Shown here piece by piece: positions 511 through 4,630 of a stretch of DNA of 10,762 bases. Under the pieces are notes generated by a model. It did no database searches, had not been told where the DNA came from, and worked only from the letters and a program-made list of their open reading frames with translations. The stretch spans positions 1-10,762 of the IMG/VR virus record IMGVR_UViG_3300005977_000052; one strand, given 5' to 3'. Position 1 is the stretch's first letter. Each line of letters starts with the position of its first letter. Both the position numbers and the translations under genes were made by a program.

Positions 511-565
511 CTATCTTGACTACTTTTTTAAGCATATAATTCATATTATATAATCAGGTGAAAAG

Positions 566-778
566 ATGGTGGAACTAAAGTTACGCTGGAGGATTAAGAC
601 AACTAAGAAAAACGGTAAAATATATCCAATATACTATATAAGCGTCCCAGGACGTTCAGCTATATTTCTGTTGGATTATGAGCCATACCTAGACCCAGTA
701 AACAAGGTAATCGTTTTTAAACCTAAACAGACTAGCACCCAACAGAACAGTACCCAAGACCAACCCCAAAGTCAATAA
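566..778 (+). CDS. Small putative DNA-binding protein, AbrB/SpoVT-like swapped-hairpin regulator
   Basis: Pattern RIKTTKKNGKIYPIYYISVP...KVIVFKP resembles the AbrB beta-hairpin (basic turn, YxIxIP, C-terminal IVxKP strand). Low-complexity Q/S/T tail. TATA-like TTTTTAAG near 525-532 and RBS AGGTG at 556-560. Confidence 0.55.
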   Translation: MVELKLRWRIKTTKKNGKIYPIYYISVPGRSAIFLLDYEPYLDPVNKVIVFKPKQTSTQQNSTQDQPQSQ

Positions 779-806
779 TTCTTTTCTTTTTCCCTTCTCT
801 CTTTTT

Positions 807-822
807 AACAGCTGTTTTAAGA
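807..822. repeat. Palindromic motif copy AACAGCTGTT-TTAAGA
   Basis: Seen directly; follows the T-rich terminator of the 566-778 gene. Confidence 0.9.
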
Positions 823-836
823 TGCTCTGCTCGTAG

Positions 837-871
837 TTCCCGTCTAACTTGTTGTGCAGAAATTTTAAATA
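837..871 (+). promoter_or_regulatory. Operator-like palindrome plus BRE/TATA promoter, copy 1
   Basis: TTCCCGTCTAAC-TT-GTTGTGCAGAAA (837-862), then TTTAAATA (864-871), 24 nt before ATG 895 (leaderless geometry). Confidence 0.85.
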
Positions 872-894
872 CCAGTCCTAACAATAGTTAAACA

Positions 895-1086
895 ATGACG
901 CCCCAGGAAGAAATAATAAAGGAAATCATAAATATGTTAGAAAAGGACTTCAGCCAGTTGCAGAAAATCGTCTATGAGATTATTAATACGAAAAATAATT
1001 TGGACAGGAAGAAGCTAGGAGAAGCATATTTTATCACACAGAAAATCGATATGGAACTATATAGATTAATTCTCTCTGTTACCTAA
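895..1086 (+). CDS. Hypothetical 63-aa helical protein; paralogue of the C-terminal domain of ORF 1611-2048
   Basis: Has its own promoter and terminator. Shares LE..L..VYEI...DR.K..EAYF..Q.I...L with the 145-aa protein. Confidence 0.85.
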   Translation: MTPQEEIIKEIINMLEKDFSQLQKIVYEIINTKNNLDRKKLGEAYFITQKIDMELYRLILSVT

Positions 1087-1103
1087 AAGCCAACCCGTTT
1101 TTT
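1087..1103 (+). terminator. Conserved oligo-T terminator AAGCCAACCCGTTTTTT
   Basis: Directly after the stop codon. Identical copy at 2047-2063 and a variant at 1423-1442. Archaeal terminators are oligo-T tracts. Confidence 0.75.
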
Positions 1104-1118
1104 ATTCACTTATTCTGC

Positions 1119-1132
1119 AAAACAGCTGTTTT
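1119..1132. repeat. Perfect 14-bp palindrome AAAACAGCTGTTTT
   Basis: Seen directly. Confidence 0.95.
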
Positions 1133-1161
1133 AGAGTTTCATTGGATGCCAAGCCCGTTAG

Positions 1162-1196
1162 TTTCAGCCTAACAAGTTGGACAGAAAACTTAAATA
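1162..1196 (+). promoter_or_regulatory. Operator-like palindrome plus BRE/TATA promoter, copy 2
   Basis: TTTCAGCCTAAC-AA-GTTGGACAGAAA (1162-1187), then CTTAAATA (1189-1196). The downstream TAAATACCAGTC is shared with copy 1. Confidence 0.88.
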
Positions 1197-1229
1197 CCAG
1201 TCTTAACACAATAGTAATGAGGAGGAAAA

Positions 1230-1418
1230 ATGATAGTAGAAGTTAAGAAAAAAGAAGATATAGTACAATTTTTAATTAATTCAAACGACACAGTAGAAAT
1301 TCCTATGAAAGAATTTTTGCAATGTATTAAGATTAAAAAAGAACTAGGTTATGGCTCTTCTGCAGAAAGAGAAGCGATTTTCAATTATATTTTATATAAA
1401 AAGTGTACCTTAACATAG
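1230..1418 (+). CDS. Hypothetical 62-aa protein
   Basis: Strong RBS GAGGAGG just upstream, own promoter, and terminator at 1423-1442. Confidence 0.8.
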   Translation: MIVEVKKKEDIVQFLINSNDTVEIPMKEFLQCIKIKKELGYGSSAEREAIFNYILYKKCTLT

Positions 1419-1422
1419 ACAC

Positions 1423-1442
1423 AAACCAATCCGTTTTTTTTT
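1423..1442 (+). terminator. Terminator variant AAACCAATCCGTTTTTTTTT
   Basis: Variant of the 1087/2047 terminator, 4 nt after the stop codon. Confidence 0.7.
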
Positions 1443-1457
1443 ATCCTTTCTCCTAAC

Positions 1458-1469
1458 AAACAGCTGTTT
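1458..1469. repeat. Palindrome AAACAGCTGTTT
   Basis: Seen directly; followed by TAAAGA. Confidence 0.95.
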
Positions 1470-1544
1470 TAAAGATGTGTTCGTCGTACCCAGCCCTCGA
1501 CCTGCTCCTTGTTTTGTGAGGCAAGGTCTGTCGTTCGTTCGCCA

Positions 1545-1579
1545 TTTCAGCCTAACTAGTTAGACAGAAACTTTATATA
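1545..1579 (+). promoter_or_regulatory. Operator-like palindrome plus BRE/TATA promoter, copy 3 (most symmetric)
   Basis: TTTCAGCCTAAC-TA-GTTAGACAGAAA (1545-1570) with perfect core CTAACTAGTTAG, then TTTATATA (1572-1579). Confidence 0.9.
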
Positions 1580-1610
1580 TCATGAAAGCAAAATGTATAC
1601 TGGGTAAAAT

Positions 1611-2048
1611 ATGGCAAAGTTAAGTAGGAGGGAATTCCAGAAAATGAAAAAGAGAGCAATAGTACAACTCAGGCATCTTGTGCTAGGGTATTATATTGGA
1701 ACGTTTACTGACGAGAACTGTATTAGGATGAACATGGGTTACGATCAAATCGAAGTTATAAATGTTCCTCAGGTACCGTTTCGTACTAAAAATGGGAATC
1801 TTGTTGTAATCGAAGCTAGAATAGTAGTTACCGGAAACGGAAGTGATAGCATCAACATTTGTGCTGGTGATGTGGAGTTTTTAGAAAATTACATAAACGT
1901 CTTAAAGGAACTTGTTTATGAGATCCAAAGATCGATGCGTGTTCCTAGTTCATTTGATAGAGAGAAAATAAAAGAAGCATATTTCGCTGTGCAAAATATT
2001 CAGAGGTATCTGGAAAAGTTATACCCGTTCGCCGAGGCTGATTCATAA
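1611..2048 (+). CDS. Hypothetical 145-aa two-domain protein (basic N-terminal/beta region plus helical C-terminal domain shared with ORF 895-1086)
   Basis: Own promoter and terminator; internal paralogy with the 63-aa ORF. Confidence 0.88.
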   Translation: MAKLSRREFQKMKKRAIVQLRHLVLGYYIGTFTDENCIRMNMGYDQIEVINVPQVPFRTKNGNLVVIEARIVVTGNGSDSINICAGDVEFLENYINVLKELVYEIQRSMRVPSSFDREKIKEAYFAVQNIQRYLEKLYPFAEADS

Positions 2049-2065
2049 GCCAACCCGTTTTTTTT
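2047..2065 (+). terminator. Conserved oligo-T terminator AAGCCAACCCGTTTTTTTT
   Basis: 17 nt identical to 1087-1103; overlaps the stop codon. Confidence 0.75.
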
Positions 2066-2134
2066 GTTTCCTATTTCTCTCAAGCAGTTGTTAAGACCCC
2101 TTTCTTCTCTCCTTCCACACCTACCTCCCAACAA

Positions 2135-2169
2135 ACTTCTCCTAACTCGTTATGTAGAAAACTTATATA
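2135..2169 (+). promoter_or_regulatory. Operator-like palindrome plus BRE/TATA promoter, copy 4
   Basis: ACTTCTCCTAAC-TC-GTTATGTAGAAA (2135-2160), then CTTATATA (2162-2169). A degenerate AGCAGTTGTTAAGA motif lies upstream at 2083-2096. Confidence 0.82.
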
Positions 2170-2201
2170 GCTGAGTTAGCACACATATATAATGACCAAA
2201 T

Positions 2202-2762
2202 ATGTCCTCTCCACATCCACAGGTTAAATCAAATCCTAAGTCAGATCAAACTACTAATTCTACTCTAACGTGGGAGGAGATCTTACGGGCTACAAGAATA
2301 GATAAACAGCATATAGATTTTGCAATAGCTCATATCGATACTGCACCAGATATGCCGTATGAATTCATTTACAGCAAATATATCCCTTCGGATTTCAAAG
2401 TCTTCCATCCCACTAGTGTTGCGGTTAGCGGGGCAGGAGGAGTGATAGGGTCTATTTTAGCTTTAAGACATGCCAGAGCAGTTAAGTACTTTGTAACAAC
2501 CCAAGAAGTACTGAATTCCAACGACAAATCTCCATTATTTCTAGCGAAGTATGCTTTAGAATTATTAGAGAAAAAATACAGAGATGTAGAAATAATTACA
2601 ATAGACCTTGGTGAGTTCGAGAAAATAAAGATACTGTTAAGTTATGGCGGGATATATATATCAGGGTTGCCTAATGAGATTATCGTTGAGATTGCCCAAT
2701 TAGCGGGTTTTGGAAGATTATGGCATTACTCGCCTATTCATCGAAAGTTCTACGTGTTCTAA
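2202..2762 (+). CDS. Hypothetical protein, possibly a degenerate DnaC/IstB-like P-loop fold
   Basis: Order of motifs VAVSGAGGVIGS (Walker A-like, no Lys), YFVTTQEVL and KYRDVEIITIDLG (Walker B-like) resembles DnaC/IstB by eye only. The CDS is solid; the fold call is weak. Confidence 0.5.
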   Translation: MSSPHPQVKSNPKSDQTTNSTLTWEEILRATRIDKQHIDFAIAHIDTAPDMPYEFIYSKYIPSDFKVFHPTSVAVSGAGGVIGSILALRHARAVKYFVTTQEVLNSNDKSPLFLAKYALELLEKKYRDVEIITIDLGEFEKIKILLSYGGIYISGLPNEIIVEIAQLAGFGRLWHYSPIHRKFYVF

Positions 2763-2779
2763 ATTTCGAGGTGACAACA

Positions 2780-3523
2780 GTGAACGAACAACAGTTTGAG
2801 CCAGAAATAAAAAAATTCAAATGGTTATTGAATAGGGGTTACATTACTCCTAAGGAGCTGGAGTTTTACAGCAACTTTTATCAAATCGAAACGACAACAA
2901 TAGTGAATTTTAAAGGGCATGATGTACTAACTCCGTTGTTTATACTAGCAAAACCCAGCCAATTTAATGACATAAAAAAAGAATTACCCCAAGCAGAAAT
3001 AGCAGACCCGATTTCAAGAAAGTTCCCTGTGGTTTCCTTACTAAGTCTAGAAAAGTTTATCAATTCCCTTGTAAATCTGAAAATACCCTACTTGTTCTTC
3101 TCATTATTCTTACATAATTCGTATAATCCTCCACAACAAGTTCACATACTTTTGTCCGCTTTAATTGAACTAGCAAACATTTCAAATAGACACATCATTA
3201 AACCTTACAACATAAAAATAAAACCTTTGCCGTTAGAAGAGCCTATTCCAGTAAGTAATCAACTGTACAAAATCATTTGCCATTACAAGAAAATGCTAGG
3301 TGAGAGAGTTGAGTGTGACGAGGGAGAATGGTGGAAATATAATCTCTGGGGAAAGGATACTATCAGTACCAGTACAGTTGACAGAAAAGTGATAGAGAAA
3401 TTAGCAGTACAATATAACATATCGCCCATATGTGTTCATTACATAATATATTATAACAAAAACATATGCGGACTTTCGACTGATATCATAAATAAAATAA
3501 AATCCCATCTCTCTTCTTCTTAA
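2780..3523 (+). CDS. Hypothetical protein, possible inactive HhH-GPD/AGOG-like C-terminal fold
   Basis: Preferred start is the in-frame GTG 2780 with RBS GAGGTGA at 2768-2774, which avoids overlap with the upstream gene. Contains PIPVSNQL and EKLAVQYNISPICVHYIIY segments. T-tract follows the stop. Confidence 0.5.
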   Translation: MNEQQFEPEIKKFKWLLNRGYITPKELEFYSNFYQIETTTIVNFKGHDVLTPLFILAKPSQFNDIKKELPQAEIADPISRKFPVVSLLSLEKFINSLVNLKIPYLFFSLFLHNSYNPPQQVHILLSALIELANISNRHIIKPYNIKIKPLPLEEPIPVSNQLYKIICHYKKMLGERVECDEGEWWKYNLWGKDTISTSTVDRKVIEKLAVQYNISPICVHYIIYYNKNICGLSTDIINKIKSHLSSS

Positions 3524-3533
3524 TTTTTTCCCT

Positions 3534-4055
3534 CTACATAGTATTCGTATTCTCCTTTCTCTCTCTTTTTGCTATCTTTTTTGCATCTATCACTTCTACT
3601 ACCCCTTCTTCTTCCAGATATTCTAGCACTGCGTCACTATCATCTATCACTATCGCCTTATCTTGGTCATATTTTTCCATTAGCTCCTTTACAACGATTC
3701 TCTTAAATTCATGATCTTTCCTGAAGTCCTTCTCGCCCCTTAGCACGACCTCGTTCGGCTCTATCCCTATCTCTGACAGTTGTTTGAGAGTAACTTCACG
3801 CTGTTTTTCTGAACGACCGCTGACTATGACGATAACTTCTGGCTTTTCCTCCTCAATTAATCGTTTGACAAACTTGATAACTTCCCACTTAGGTTCGTCC
3901 AAGTTCATGAACCTCGGTGATTGATAACATTCCCAAAACACACGGTCGGGTTTCCAAGATAATGTTTTCTTGTCTCCTCTGGATATCTTCTCGCATTCGT
4001 TCCACCTGGCAGAAGTGTCGAAAAGCGTGCCATCCATATCCAAGACCAGCATCAT
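3534..4055 (-). CDS. HAD-superfamily phosphatase, polynucleotide kinase 3'-phosphatase (PNKP C-terminal)-like
   Basis: Motif I LVLDMDGTL, motif II IVSGR, motif III RKDHEFK, motif IV VIDDS; the LRGEKDFRKD segment is typical of this subfamily. Confidence 0.9.
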   Translation of the reverse strand: MMLVLDMDGTLFDTSARWNECEKISRGDKKTLSWKPDRVFWECYQSPRFMNLDEPKWEVIKFVKRLIEEEKPEVIVIVSGRSEKQREVTLKQLSEIGIEPNEVVLRGEKDFRKDHEFKRIVVKELMEKYDQDKAIVIDDSDAVLEYLEEEGVVEVIDAKKIAKRERKENTNTM

Positions 4056-4630
4056 TTTGCTCCACTCCCTGGTTCCTTAAAACCTAGTATTGTTATTTTC
4101 CCGTTCTCTTCTTTGAACTCTAACTCCTTAGCTTCTCCCTCGACACTGTACACAAAGTAAAACGTTTTGAGACCCTTACCGTCTCTTTCCCACTCCAGTT
4201 TACTACATTTCCCATCAAATCTACTATGGAAGTAGTCTATCGCCTCTTGGTCGTTCTGTTCTTTTGCTATTTTTTCTAACGTTGCAGGGTCAAACGGTTG
4301 ATAGAATAAGTAGACCTTCTTATTGCCTTTTCCATCATCAAAAAAGAAGTATATTCCGTATTTGAACAGGTTAAGGTTTGACGTCGTTATTATTTCACGG
4401 TGTTTCATGATATATTCGTTGTCCGCAACGGCAGAAATATAAAGTGTATCATGTCCGTCACCTATGCCTATACATAGCAGGTTTGTGTGTACGATTTTGT
4501 CGTTTTTGATCCTGTCCATTCTCACATAGAAAGAGATATACGCTACACCTATGACAGGTTTAGCCTGGGGCATGAACCCTTCCACACGCACTATGAAGTA
4601 TTTGTCTATATCGACTTTCGAGTTTACCAT
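4052..4630 (-). CDS. Hypothetical beta-rich protein (about 192 aa), co-transcribed with the HAD gene
   Basis: Preferred start is ATG 4630, 23 nt after a minus-strand TATA TTTTTAAA (4653-4660). Its stop overlaps the HAD start (ATGA, 4052-4055). Confidence 0.8.
   Translation of the reverse strand: MVNSKVDIDKYFIVRVEGFMPQAKPVIGVAYISFYVRMDRIKNDKIVHTNLLCIGIGDGHDTLYISAVADNEYIMKHREIITTSNLNLFKYGIYFFFDDGKGNKKVYLFYQPFDPATLEKIAKEQNDQEAIDYFHSRFDGKCSKLEWERDGKGLKTFYFVYSVEGEAKELEFKEENGKITILGFKEPGSGAK

What the first reader, a model, noticed from the sequence alone, without database searches (positions are those of the whole stretch)
895..2065. 63-aa ORF is a stand-alone copy of the C-terminal domain of the 145-aa ORF and shares its terminator
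Seen: MLEKDFSQLQKIVYEIINTK----NNLDRKKLGEAYFITQKIDMELYRL aligns with FLENYINVLKELVYEIQRSMRVPSSFDREKIKEAYFAVQNIQRYLEKL. Both genes end in the identical AAGCCAACCCGTTTTTT even though the proteins have diverged considerably. Inference: an old module duplication with domain gain or loss, and the terminator held by selection or conversion. The short form could be a dominant-negative or heterodimer partner, or a paralogous inhibitor with different specificity, as seen in expanded anti-CRISPR families.
Basis: partly seen in the sequence, partly recalled or inferred. Interest (0 to 1): 0.6.

Follow-up and report, generated by a model that had tools for sequence, protein, structure and literature searches.

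The report
Two D-63 paralogues in virus cassettes
A hot-spring archaeal virus carries a short copy and a longer fused copy of the known D-63 helical-hairpin protein, each in its own promoter-to-terminator cassette; the similarity is real and old, but the shared terminator is a general boundary element of these cassettes, not a trace of the duplication.

Summary
ORF63 (895-1086) and residues 88-137 of ORF145 (1611-2048) align at 36% identity (BLASTP E 6e-7; 0 of 5000 shuffles reach the score). The 17-mer AAGCCAACCCGTTTTTT follows both genes.

The window is a fragment of a Sulfolobus monocaudavirus-like virus. ORF63 is a member of the known SSV1 D-63 family (Pfam PF20940, PDB 1SKV). ORF145 joins an N-terminal alpha/beta domain, which has no detectable relatives, to a D-63 hairpin. 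That architecture is undescribed in the papers I could search.

The long forms make one clade (support 100/100). The two window genes are not sisters (AU p 2.6e-6), so the duplication is old. In 6 of 7 readable loci a short form lies just upstream of the long form, but the two do not co-diverge, and SMV4 has only the long form.

The terminator box is part of a terminator/palindrome/dyad-operator/BRE-TATA module. This module bounds every cassette here and in eight relatives, including cassettes with unrelated genes. In SMV4 the same promoter module precedes an AcrIII-1-family gene and a CopG repressor gene.

A 2024 paper predicted the SMV3 and SMV4 homologues as anti-defence genes ADG.67 and ADG.72. 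Function is untested, and heterodimer prediction gave only weak support.

The parts
837..862 (+). Operator-like element (TTCCCGTCTAACTTGTTGTGCAGAAA) overlapping the BRE of the ORF63 promoter. It is a degenerate copy of the 26-nt dyad TTTCAGCCTAAC-nn-GTTAGACAGAAA.
   Evidence: Repeat family D1/D2. Pattern search found 6 hits against 0.06 expected. The element is aligned in 19 intergenic regions.
864..871 (+). TATA box TTTAAATA of ORF63. It ends 23 nt before the ATG, so the mRNA is probably leaderless (inferred from the usual Sulfolobus TATA-to-start spacing).
   Evidence: It matches the TTTAWATA early-promoter consensus of PMC11065993.
895..1086 (+). ORF63: a stand-alone member of the SSV1 D-63 family, a helical hairpin expected to dimerise into a four-helix bundle.
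   Evidence: Pfam PF20940 at 65.1 bits, E 5.5e-18. PDB 1SKV at E 1e-9 over residues 5-59. phrog_7928 at E 1.1e-15.
1087..1103 (+). Terminator box AAGCCAACCCG followed by T6 (an archaeal oligo-T terminator with a conserved upstream box).
1121..1130 (.). Palindrome AACAGCTGTT, the second element of the intergenic module.
   Evidence: 7 exact copies in the window. With up to 1 mismatch there are 10 matches against 0.42 expected.
1162..1196 (+). Dyad element (1162-1187) plus TATA box CTTAAATA (1189-1196) of the ORF62 promoter.
1230..1418 (+). ORF62: an unrelated small cassette gene lying between the two paralogues. Function unknown.
   Evidence: No Pfam hit. phrog_15325 at E 1.8e-5.
1423..1442 (+). 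Third copy of the terminator box (AAACCAATCCG followed by T9), behind ORF62.
   Evidence: 2 mismatches.
1459..1468 (.). Palindrome AACAGCTGTT.
1490..1502 (+). Conserved box CCAGCCCTCGACC upstream of the long-form promoter. In relatives it also lies upstream of the C2H2 cassettes. Invariant in the 6 intergenic regions aligned.
1545..1579 (+). Best dyad element TTTCAGCCTAACTAGTTAGACAGAAA (1545-1570) plus TATA box TTTATATA (1572-1579) of the ORF145 promoter.
   Evidence: Palindrome I7. Hits on both strands.
1611..1862 (+). ORF145 N-terminal domain (aa 1-84): one helix followed by a long antiparallel beta-sheet, with a variable hairpin at about aa 52-68 that some homologues lack. No relatives or fold match found outside the family.
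   Evidence: AF2 model with 12 sequences: mean pLDDT 87.6, H6-24, E27-34, E37-51, E69-84. Searches. The indel is visible.
1863..2048 (+). ORF145 C-terminal D-63 domain (aa 85-142, helices 85-108 and 118-142), a short tail and the stop codon.
   Evidence: Pfam PF20940 at 28.8 bits. Block pLDDT 92-97. Foldseek match to 1skv_A: probability 0.95, TM by target 0.62, rmsd 2.5 A over 54 columns, 31% identity.
2047..2065 (+). Terminator box AAGCCAACCCG followed by T8, behind ORF145.
2135..2169 (+). Degenerate dyad element plus TATA box CTTATATA of the next gene, ORF186 (a homologue of an annotated virion structural protein).

Best explanation
The window is a fragment of a Sulfolobus monocaudavirus-like tailed spindle virus, close to SMV3 and SMV4.

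Between the integrase gene and the virion-protein genes lies a row of single-gene cassettes. Each cassette is bounded by one conserved intergenic module, in this order:
- stop codon, then box GCYAAYCCG and an oligo-T terminator;
- a pyrimidine-rich stretch;
- the palindrome AACAGCTGTT;
- a variable spacer;
- a 26-nt dyad, TTTCAGCCTAAC-nn-GTTAGACAGAAA, that overlaps a strong BRE;
- a TATA box, and about 23-35 nt further the start codon.

ORF63 and ORF145 are two old paralogues of the D-63 family placed in such cassettes. ORF63 is the classical 60-aa helical hairpin that dimerises into an antiparallel four-helix bundle. ORF145 is a lineage-specific fusion in which the same hairpin follows a beta-rich domain that has no detectable relatives.

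Shown here:
- the homology of the two genes;
- the predicted fold of the hairpin;
- that the long forms are one clade and the window pair are not sisters;
- recurrent placement of the short gene upstream of the long one;
- conservation of the module behind and before unrelated genes.

Inferred:
- Both proteins act by protein-protein contact, not on DNA.
- The hairpin serves as a dimerisation scaffold. Polar residues kept in both families (D37, R/K38, K40, E43 and Q49 in ORF63 numbering) form a common binding surface.
- The long form therefore works as a two-armed adaptor, adding a second binding domain to a function it shares with the short form.
- Both genes are switched on early, together with the other cassettes, under a dimeric repressor that binds the dyad. 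The CopG-type ribbon-helix-helix protein is the obvious candidate.

The identical terminator reflects selection on a shared boundary and regulatory element. Recombination between modules may add to it. It is not common descent of the two genes' 3' ends.
For: Identity of the element:
- 82-84% nucleotide identity to SMV3 and SMV4 over 54-57% of the window.
- The record is a virus fragment, about 20% complete.

Homology and fold.

Age of the duplication:
- Long forms form one split at 100/100.
- The window pair as sisters is rejected, AU p 2.6e-6 (repeated).
- ORF63 is closer to SSV1 D-63 (45% identity) than to ORF145 (36%).
- Coding DNA of the two domains is only 58.7% identical, so there has been no recent conversion.

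Recurrent pairing:
- The short gene is directly upstream of the long one in L008, L018, L020/21/22 and L027.
- One gene lies between them in the window and in L005/06/07.

The module:
- 19 intergenic regions from 8 viruses align to it.
- Module identity is 70-92%, against 61-79% for the adjacent coding DNA.
- The dyad occurs 6 times against 0.06 expected; the palindrome gives 10 matches against 0.42 expected.
- In the complete SMV4 genome the same palindrome, dyad, BRE and TATA stand before gp61 (STIV_B116-like, the AcrIII-1 family, Pfam E 6.4e-18) and gp58 (RHH/CopG, E 8e-8).

Literature:
- D-63 is a ROP-like dimeric bundle proposed as an adaptor or copy-number regulator (PMC9608457; PMC6080066).
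- SMV3 gp48 is ADG.67, typed 'ADa' (the type given to Aca8-like putative regulators), and SMV4 gp40 is ADG.72, both predicted from conserved early promoters (PMC11065993, supplement file 3).

Population data:
- Metagenome contigs break at the modules and carry other alleles between the same flanks.
Against: - No functional data exist for any D-63 protein.
- Dimerisation of either window protein was not measured.
- The N-domain model rests on 12 sequences and was not folded alone.
- The 'common binding surface' is inferred from conserved polar residues, which could equally be structural (loop capping, salt bridges).
- No transcript ends or starts are mapped. The only RNA-library signal is two contigs, at 584-758 and 1642-1793, in a library that may contain DNA.
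- The regulator of the dyad is a guess.
- The promoter criterion is not specific for accessory genes, since the same module precedes the virion-protein gene ORF186 (its SMV3 homologue is ADG.71).
Confidence: 0.8

Rival explanations
1. The short form is a specific partner of the long form. ORF63 pairs with the hairpin of ORF145 in a mixed four-helix bundle and so titrates or tunes it (dominant-negative or regulatory subunit).
For: - A short gene lies upstream of the long gene in 6 of 7 distinct loci where the upstream gene can be read.
- Both carry the same dimerising fold.
- Complex prediction of ORF145(85-145) with ORF63 gave 'weak support': score 0.45, best control 0.01.
- Calibration counts for that mark: 51 of 78 solved complexes and 2 of 108 mismatched pairs reached it. 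At 0.60 or under, only 5 of those 78 solved complexes did, as did all 4 mismatches that passed (of 180).
- The runs agree in at least 89% of contacts, and the partner's pLDDT is at least 78.
Against: - SMV4 has a long form and no D-63 short form anywhere in its 51.7-kb genome.
- About as many viruses carry the short form alone: SMV3, L010, L014-L017.
- Short and long forms do not co-diverge. Spearman rho is -0.16 (p 0.56) over 15 locus pairs. Three different short subtypes accompany closely related long forms in the window, L027 and L005.
- A solved D-63 homodimer exists, so the weak pass may be recalled likeness.
Confidence: 0.2
2. One or both proteins are anti-defence proteins (Acr-like or inhibitors of another host immune system) that diversify by duplication and cassette exchange.
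For: - Homologues were predicted as ADG.67 (typed 'ADa') and ADG.72 from conserved early regulatory sequences (PMC11065993).
- The window promoters fit that BRE/TATA consensus.
- The same module precedes an AcrIII-1-family gene in SMV4.
- The locus is hypervariable: between the integrase and virion genes the gene content differs in nearly every relative.
- Alleles are swapped within one sample.
Against: - No activity has been shown for any family member.
- There is no similarity to known Acr families in Pfam.
- D-63 is conserved across two virus families and lies in the fusellovirus T5 operon, which suits a core regulatory role better.
- The paper itself files the short form as 'ADa', the type it gives to Aca8-like putative regulators.
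- The promoter module also drives a virion-protein gene, so the promoter criterion is loose.
Confidence: 0.25
3. The pair arose by a recent duplication inside this genome, and the identical 17-mer is what is left of the duplicated 3' end (or of recent gene conversion between the two copies).
For: Exact identity of the 17-mer behind two genes whose proteins have diverged.
Against: - Sister placement of the two copies is rejected (AU p 2.6e-6).
- Orthologues of each copy in other viruses carry the same box. TAAAAGCCAAC... follows short forms and TAAGCCAAC... follows long forms.
- The box also follows unrelated genes.
- Beyond the T-run the two downstream regions differ.
Confidence: 0.03
4. The similarity is a chance or compositional match between two coiled-coil-like helical segments.
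For: Helical hairpins are common and low in information. Structure searches return many generic hairpins at Z 5-6.
Against: - 0 of 5000 shuffles reach the alignment score (z about 10.5-11).
- Both proteins pass the curated Pfam cut-off.
- They share the motif D-[RK]-x-K-[LI]-x-E-A-Y-F-x-x-Q-x-I.
- 1SKV is the only high-probability PDB match (probability 0.95).
Confidence: 0.01

Closest known systems
SSV1 D-63 (PDB 1SKV; Pfam PF20940 SSV1_D-63), Fuselloviridae
   Same: ORF63 has the same length, the same helix-loop-helix hairpin and the same signature in helix 2. It is 45% identical to SSV1 D-63 and matches 1SKV at E 1e-9. The ORF145 C-terminus matches the same Pfam model and the same structure.
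   Different: In fuselloviruses the gene lies inside the polycistronic T5 early operon. Here each copy is a single-gene cassette with its own promoter and terminator, in a much larger virus of another family. ORF145 carries an extra 84-residue N-terminal domain.
SMV4 gp40 (YP_009218504.1, 'ADG.72') and SMV3 gp48 (YP_009226271.1, 'ADG.67') of Bhoobalan-Chitty et al. 2024 (PMC11065993)
   Same: SMV4 gp40 is the orthologue of ORF145 (52% identity over 99% of its length; BFVD model TM 0.72). SMV3 gp48 is the counterpart of ORF63 (50% identity). They occupy the same genome position and have the same promoter module.
   Different: Each of those two genomes has only one of the two forms; the window has both. 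The paper files them as two unrelated families, and its table entries for them do not note that ADG.72 contains a D-63 domain.
ROP (repressor of primer) of ColE1 plasmids
   Same: A homodimer of helical hairpins forming an antiparallel four-helix bundle. The literature uses this likeness to propose an adaptor or copy-number role for D-63 (PMC9608457; PMC6080066).
   Different: There is no sequence similarity (no Pfam Rop hit at E up to 0.1). RNA binding has not been shown for D-63. The likeness is one of fold only.
Acr/Aca single-gene cassettes with conserved early regulatory sequences in archaeal viruses (SIRV2 termini; Aca8)
   Same: Small single genes, each behind a near-identical strong BRE/TATA promoter with a flanking conserved sequence. 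A small DNA-binding repressor gene sits in the same regulon. Gene content is highly variable.
   Different: The motif here is its own: a dyad with CTAAC-nn-GTTAG at its centre, the AACAGCTGTT palindrome and a conserved terminator box. The candidate regulator is a CopG-type RHH rather than the wHTH Aca8. No anti-defence activity is known for D-63 proteins.

Membership tests
SSV1 D-63 family (Pfam PF20940) | Sequence match to the family profile above the curated cut-off (27 bits) | tested here: met
   ORF63 scores 65.1 bits. ORF145 residues 90-138 score 28.8 bits, just above the cut-off. The six-frame search gave 63.9 and 29.9 bits. The more distant long forms (SMV4 gp40, P0012, P0036, P0037, P0039) fall below the model on their own and are linked through the long-form alignment.
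SSV1 D-63 family (Pfam PF20940) | Fold: two long antiparallel helices joined by a short loop (about 55-60 residues) | tested here: met
   ORF145 model: H85-108 and H118-142, block pLDDT 92-97. Foldseek match to 1skv_A: probability 0.95, TM by target 0.62, rmsd 2.5 A over 54 columns. ORF63 was not folded; it aligns to 1SKV over residues 5-59 at E 1e-9.
SSV1 D-63 family (Pfam PF20940) | Dimerisation into an antiparallel four-helix bundle | tested here: inconclusive
   Only the mixed pair was predicted: weak support, score 0.45 against best control 0.01. The pass may reflect memory of 1SKV.
SSV1 D-63 family (Pfam PF20940) | Stand-alone protein of about 60 aa (the architecture of all described members) | tested here: met
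   Met for ORF63 (63 aa). Not met for ORF145, which is a fusion of an N-terminal domain with a D-63 domain. ORF145 is therefore a new architecture within the family.
Predicted anti-defence genes (ADG) of archaeal viruses, sensu PMC11065993 | A strong BRE/TATA promoter (TTTAWATA after a purine-rich BRE) inside a regulatory sequence shared by several genes of the same genome | tested here: met
   Four such promoters lie in 837-2169. The criteria are quoted.
Predicted anti-defence genes (ADG) of archaeal viruses, sensu PMC11065993 | Homologue listed in the paper's ADG table | tested here: met
   SMV3 gp48 is ADG.67 (type ADa) and SMV4 gp40 is ADG.72 (type ADG).
Anti-CRISPR / anti-defence proteins (functional class) | Demonstrated inhibition of a host defence system | not testable with these tools
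   No experiment exists for any D-63 family member in the papers searched.
Anti-CRISPR / anti-defence proteins (functional class) | Sequence similarity to a characterised Acr family (AcrID1, AcrIIIB1, AcrIII-1/DUF1874) | tested here: not met
   The Pfam scan of ORF63 and ORF145 returns only PF20940 plus sub-threshold noise. The exhaustive profile search returns only the long-form family.
ROP family | Sequence membership (Pfam Rop) | tested here: not met
   No Rop hit at E up to 0.1. The likeness is of fold only, and comes from the literature.

The most novel reading that the evidence does not exclude
The short and long D-63 proteins form a two-part early module. The long form is a bivalent adaptor whose N-domain, which has no relatives, seizes a host factor (for instance a defence or replication component). 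The short form shares the same bundle surface or co-assembles with the long form, and so sets the long form's activity. The cassettes are exchanged between co-infecting viruses by recombination at the conserved terminator-promoter modules. That would make the modules work like integron-style boundaries for accessory genes in archaeal viruses.
Probability: 0.12. Interest if true: 0.65.

Novelty: new variant of a known kind. Interest (0 to 1): 0.38.

Why it matters
D-63 was among the first archaeal virus proteins to have a solved structure, yet twenty years on it still has no function.

- **A handle on function.** A natural fusion of the D-63 hairpin to a second domain, usually placed next to a stand-alone copy, suggests what the hairpin is for: a dimerising scaffold or adaptor. 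It also gives two proteins to use as baits.
- **Two predicted families are one.** The finding shows that ADG.67 and ADG.72, both from the 2024 promoter-based screen, share a domain.
- **A way to find more cassettes.** The full cassette boundary (terminator box, palindrome, dyad operator, BRE/TATA) could be used to find further early or accessory genes, and the regulator, in monocaudavirus-like viruses. It may also explain how such genes are shuffled.

None of this is a surprise in kind. Small early genes with shared promoters and rapid turnover are already known in archaeal viruses.

Tried and rejected
N-domain identity. Nothing convincing came from any of these:
- Pfam and PHROGs.
- Word search with residues 1-88, which found only the family itself.
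- ESM Atlas by features.
- Exhaustive profile search of 1.84 billion representatives: 6 hits, all long-form family. I used this search because the word search and the family scans left the domain open.
- Foldseek against PDB and BFVD. Only 1SKV matched, for the hairpin, and only SMV4 gp40 in BFVD.
- VIA-align wide: best Z 6.3, all generic helical hairpins.
- Atlas by shape: TM 0.39 or less.

Other dead ends:
- hhalign of the long-form alignment against the C2H2 cassette proteins: E 0.009 but probability 4.5%. Inconclusive.
- BLASTP of ORF145 against the alternative cassette proteins (119 aa, 173 aa): nothing.
- RNA structure in the long spacer 1470-1550: consensus energy -2.4 kcal/mol and one covarying pair. 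No evidence for a structured RNA.
- Rfam on the whole window: no hit.
- Viral-contig scan with the long-form alignment: only SMV4.
- P0038, a 58-aa database protein equal to ORF145 residues 88-145 with GTG read as the start. No contig is on record. I treat it as a truncated gene call, not as evidence for an internal start.
- Kraft et al. 2004 (the D-63 structure paper) is not held. What I say about it comes from reviews that cite it.
- The first AF2 run with 9 sequences was poor in the N-domain (mean pLDDT 70). The 12-sequence run replaced it.

Procedure:
- No alternative genetic code was used.
- Read laying was given 2241 letters.
Full report
**What the window is.**
- The 10,762-base window is an IMG/VR virus fragment, estimated about 20% complete.
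- It is 82-84% identical in DNA to Sulfolobus monocaudaviruses SMV3 and SMV4 over 54-57% of its length. These are large tailed spindle viruses filed under Bicaudaviridae.
- Gene order matches those genomes. It runs: integrase C-terminus (1-510), a 70-aa gene, the region in question, two homologues of annotated virion structural proteins, a HAD-type phosphatase or polynucleotide-kinase-like gene, and so on.

**Check of the observation.**
- The Smith-Waterman score is 77. Shuffles give 27 +/- 4.7, and none of 5000 reach 77 (Gumbel p 4e-7).
- The 17-mer AAGCCAACCCGTTTTTT is exact at 1087-1103 and 2047-2063.
- It is incomplete in two ways. A third copy with two mismatches (1423-1439) follows ORF62, an unrelated gene lying between the two. 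And the 17-mer is only the first element of a longer repeated intergenic unit.

**What the proteins are.**
- ORF63 belongs to a known family, SSV1 D-63. It scores 65.1 bits on Pfam PF20940 (E 5.5e-18) and matches PDB 1SKV at E 1e-9 over residues 5-59.
- In the literature D-63 is a helical hairpin that dimerises into an antiparallel, ROP-like four-helix bundle. It has been proposed as an adaptor or copy-number regulator, but no function has been shown (PMC9608457; PMC6080066; PMC3367457).
- ORF145 residues 90-138 pass the same Pfam model just above its cut-off (28.8 against 27 bits).
- An AlphaFold2 model built on 12 family members has mean pLDDT 87.6. It shows helix 6-24, a long antiparallel sheet (27-34, 37-51, 69-84) with a small hairpin excursion, then two long helices, 85-108 and 118-142, with block pLDDT 92-97.
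- The two helices superpose on 1SKV: Foldseek probability 0.95, TM by target 0.62, rmsd 2.5 A over 54 columns, 31% identity.
- The N-terminal domain has no relative outside the long-form family. I searched Pfam, PHROGs, the word-indexed database, the exhaustive profile search of 1.84 billion representatives, and four structure libraries.
- I did not fold that domain alone, so I do not call its fold new.

**Age of the paralogy.**
- I aligned the D-63 domains of 12 long forms, 11 or 12 short forms from monocaudavirus-like contigs, and 4 fusellovirus D-63 proteins.
- The long forms make one split at 100/100 support.
- Forcing the window's two copies together costs 78 log-likelihood units (AU p 2.6e-6).
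- ORF63 is closer to SSV1 D-63 (45% identity) than to ORF145.
- The coding DNA of the two domains is 58.7% identical.
- The tree is unrooted, so direction is inference. Short forms occur in two virus families and the N-domain never occurs alone, which favours gain of the N-domain after a duplication in the monocaudavirus lineage.

**How the two genes travel.**
- The long-form family is small: about 13 clusters, all from acidic hot-spring metagenomes or SMV4.
- Where the upstream gene can be read, a short D-63 gene precedes the long one in 6 of 7 distinct loci.
- It is adjacent in L008, L018, L020/21/22 and L027. One gene lies between in the window and in L005/06/07.
- The exception is SMV4, whose whole genome has no short form detectable with the Pfam model.
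- About as many viruses have the short form alone: SMV3, L010, L014-L017.
- The two forms do not co-diverge. Across 15 locus pairs the identities are uncorrelated (Spearman rho -0.16, p 0.56). Closely related long forms (window, L027, L005; 70-77% identical in the domain) sit beside three different short subtypes (41-48% identical).
- This pattern looks like independent assortment of cassettes rather than a co-evolving pair.
- A structure prediction of ORF145(85-145) with ORF63 gave 'weak support': score 0.45, best control 0.01.
- Calibration for that mark: 51 of 78 solved complexes and 2 of 108 mismatched pairs reached it. At 0.60 or under, only 5 of those 78 solved complexes did, as did all 4 mismatches that passed (of 180).
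- The runs agree in at least 89% of contacts, and the partner's pLDDT is at least 78.
- Because a D-63 homodimer is solved, this pass may be recalled likeness.

**The 'shared terminator'.**
- Nineteen intergenic regions from eight viruses align to one module.
- The module runs: stop codon; (A)AGCYAACCCG and T6-9; a pyrimidine-rich stretch; AAACAGCTGTTTTAGAG; a variable spacer; CCTAAC-nn-GTT-nn-GCAGAAAA; TTTAAATA or TTTATATA; then the start codon about 23-35 nt further.
- In the window the promoter part occurs four times (837-871, 1162-1196, 1545-1579, 2135-2169).
- It contains a 26-nt dyad, TTTCAGCCTAAC-nn-GTTAGACAGAAA, that overlaps the BRE (6 hits against 0.06 expected).
- The palindrome AACAGCTGTT occurs seven times exactly in the window. 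With up to one mismatch there are 10 matches against 0.42 expected.
- The terminator box follows every short and long D-63 gene examined.
- It also follows unrelated cassettes: window ORF62, the 46-aa and 173-aa genes of L010, and SMV3 gp70. It does not follow the 70-aa family or the C2H2 cassette genes.
- The modules are at least as conserved as the genes they flank: 70-92% against 61-79% nucleotide identity.
- So the box is kept by selection as a general cassette boundary. Its identity behind ORF63 and ORF145 is not a trace of their common origin.
- It has no inverted repeat, which fits archaeal oligo-T termination. This last point rests on general knowledge of archaeal termination, not on a test here.

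**Regulatory company.**
- In the complete SMV3 and SMV4 genomes the dyad-BRE element occurs at roughly nine and six places. The reversed-pattern control gave none.
- In SMV4 the same palindrome, dyad, BRE and TATA stand before gp61, a STIV_B116-like (AcrIII-1 family) gene (Pfam E 6.4e-18).
- They also stand before gp58, a CopG-type ribbon-helix-helix gene (E 8e-8).
- Bhoobalan-Chitty et al. 2024 (PMC11065993) used exactly this kind of shared early promoter to predict anti-defence genes.
- Their table lists SMV3 gp48 (the short form) as ADG.67 of type 'ADa', the type given to Aca8-like putative regulators.
- It lists SMV4 gp40 (the long form) as ADG.72, SMV3 gp47 (the C2H2 cassette) as ADG.04, and the virion-protein homologue gp46 as ADG.71.
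- The two D-63 forms are filed there as separate families.
It is not evidence of activity, and the inclusion of a virion-protein gene shows that the criterion is loose.

**Population view.**
- I laid Logan contigs of three hot-spring DNA runs and one metatranscriptome on 560-2800.
- The assemblies break at the modules. For example, separate contigs cover 1160-1487 and 1458-2089.
- The modules carry several-fold higher summed depth than the cassette bodies.
- Contigs exist in which the ORF63 body is replaced between the same flanks (joints 891->1081 and 892->1077). Loose ends at 891 begin with other short-form N-termini.
- Other contigs skip or replace ORF62 plus ORF145 (joint 1196->2060).
- The RNA library holds only two small contigs, at 584-758 and 1642-1793. 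The tool warns that these do not prove transcription.

**Most likely mechanism.**
- Shown: two old D-63 paralogues, one of them fused to a domain with no relatives. They lie in separately promoted and terminated cassettes that share their regulatory module with other accessory genes.
- Inferred: both are early proteins that act through protein contacts.
- Inferred: the hairpin is a dimerising scaffold. The polar residues conserved in both families (D37, R/K38, K40, E43 and Q49 in ORF63 numbering) mark a common binding surface.
- Inferred: the long form adds a second binding domain and so works as a bivalent adaptor.
- Inferred: a dimeric repressor, most plausibly the CopG-type protein, shuts the cassettes off through the dyad.
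- I put 0.8 on the structural and evolutionary part, which is what the confidence figure refers to. I put much less on any specific function: about 0.25 for anti-defence and 0.2 for a specific short-long heterodimer.

**Novelty and verdict.**
- The family, its fold and the promoter-defined cassette idea are all known.
- New here are the recognition that the long form (ADG.72) is a D-63 fusion, its recurrent position next to a stand-alone copy, and the full description of the cassette boundary, including the terminator box and the dyad.
- That makes it a new variant of a known kind, of moderate interest to specialists in archaeal viruses.

Noticed in passing
window 566-778 (ORF70); L005 3760-4149; L020 3646-4044: ORF70, always the first gene after the integrase, is a single copy of a roughly 60-aa module. 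In relatives the module is tandemly doubled within one protein (129-132 aa). PHROG 18276 has 124 positions, and the window protein matches only positions 1-63. It ends in a Q/S/T-rich tail. This is a second case of a short-versus-long polymorphism at this locus. The protein may bind DNA, but there is no Pfam hit.
   Followed up: partly
window 837-862, 1162-1187, 1545-1570, 2135-2160; SMV4 (NC_029011.1) 46026-46044 and 47981-47999: A 26-nt dyad, TTTCAGCCTAAC-nn-GTTAGACAGAAA, overlaps the BRE of every cassette promoter. In SMV4 the same element precedes an AcrIII-1-family gene (gp61) and a CopG-type RHH gene (gp58). The RHH protein is a natural candidate for the regulator.
   Followed up: partly
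window 62, 807, 1121, 1459, 7338, 9230, 10531: The palindrome AACAGCTGTT occurs 7 times exactly (10 matches with up to one mismatch, against 0.42 expected). It usually lies 20-30 nt after an oligo-T terminator. Two copies lie inside reading frames (62 and 10531). Its role is unknown.
   Followed up: partly
window 1490-1502; L001 (SMV3), L002, L005, L008, L016 upstream regions: An invariant box, CCAGCCCTCGACC, lies in the long spacer upstream of the long-form promoter. The same box lies upstream of the C2H2 cassette promoters in relatives, so the spacer belongs to the position in the row rather than to the gene. No conserved RNA hairpin was found there.
   Followed up: partly
window 560-2800, Logan contigs of runs X1-X3: Metagenome contigs end at the intergenic modules, and the modules have several-fold higher summed depth than the cassette bodies. 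Variants exist with the ORF63 body replaced (joints 891->1081 and 892->1077) and with ORF62 plus ORF145 skipped or replaced (joint 1196->2060). This suggests cassette exchange within one hot-spring population.
   Followed up: partly
SMV3 gp47 (L001 2798-3157), L016 1296-1667, L027 1298-1660: An alternative or additional cassette encodes a C2H2 zinc-finger protein of about 120 aa (ADG.04 in PMC11065993). Its C-terminal half aligns weakly with the ORF145 N-domain (hhalign E 0.009, probability 4.5%). That is too weak to call homology.
   Followed up: partly
window 1872-2048: A public database holds a 58-aa protein equal to ORF145 residues 88-145, with GTG at 1872 read as the start. It is most likely a truncated gene call. 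An internal start there would yield a stand-alone D-63 domain from the long gene. No evidence was found either way.
   Followed up: partly
window 2202-2762 and 2720-3523: ORF186 and ORF267 (homologues of annotated virion structural proteins) overlap by 43 nt as listed. Relatives encode 240-249 aa, and the PHROG match starts at residue 23, so the true start of the second gene is probably further downstream.
   Followed up: no
window 3534-4055 (minus strand): A HAD-family phosphatase, similar to the phosphatase domain of polynucleotide kinase. It is 85.9% identical in DNA to Acidianus tailed spindle virus over 3510-4086, far more than the rest of the window, which has no match to that virus. This suggests recent exchange of the gene between virus lineages.
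   Followed up: no
L002 (SMV4) 1278-2007: The SMV4 integrase is annotated as two separate reading frames (gp45 and gp44), whereas SMV3 has one. The window holds only the C-terminal 169 residues, so its state cannot be judged.
   Followed up: no
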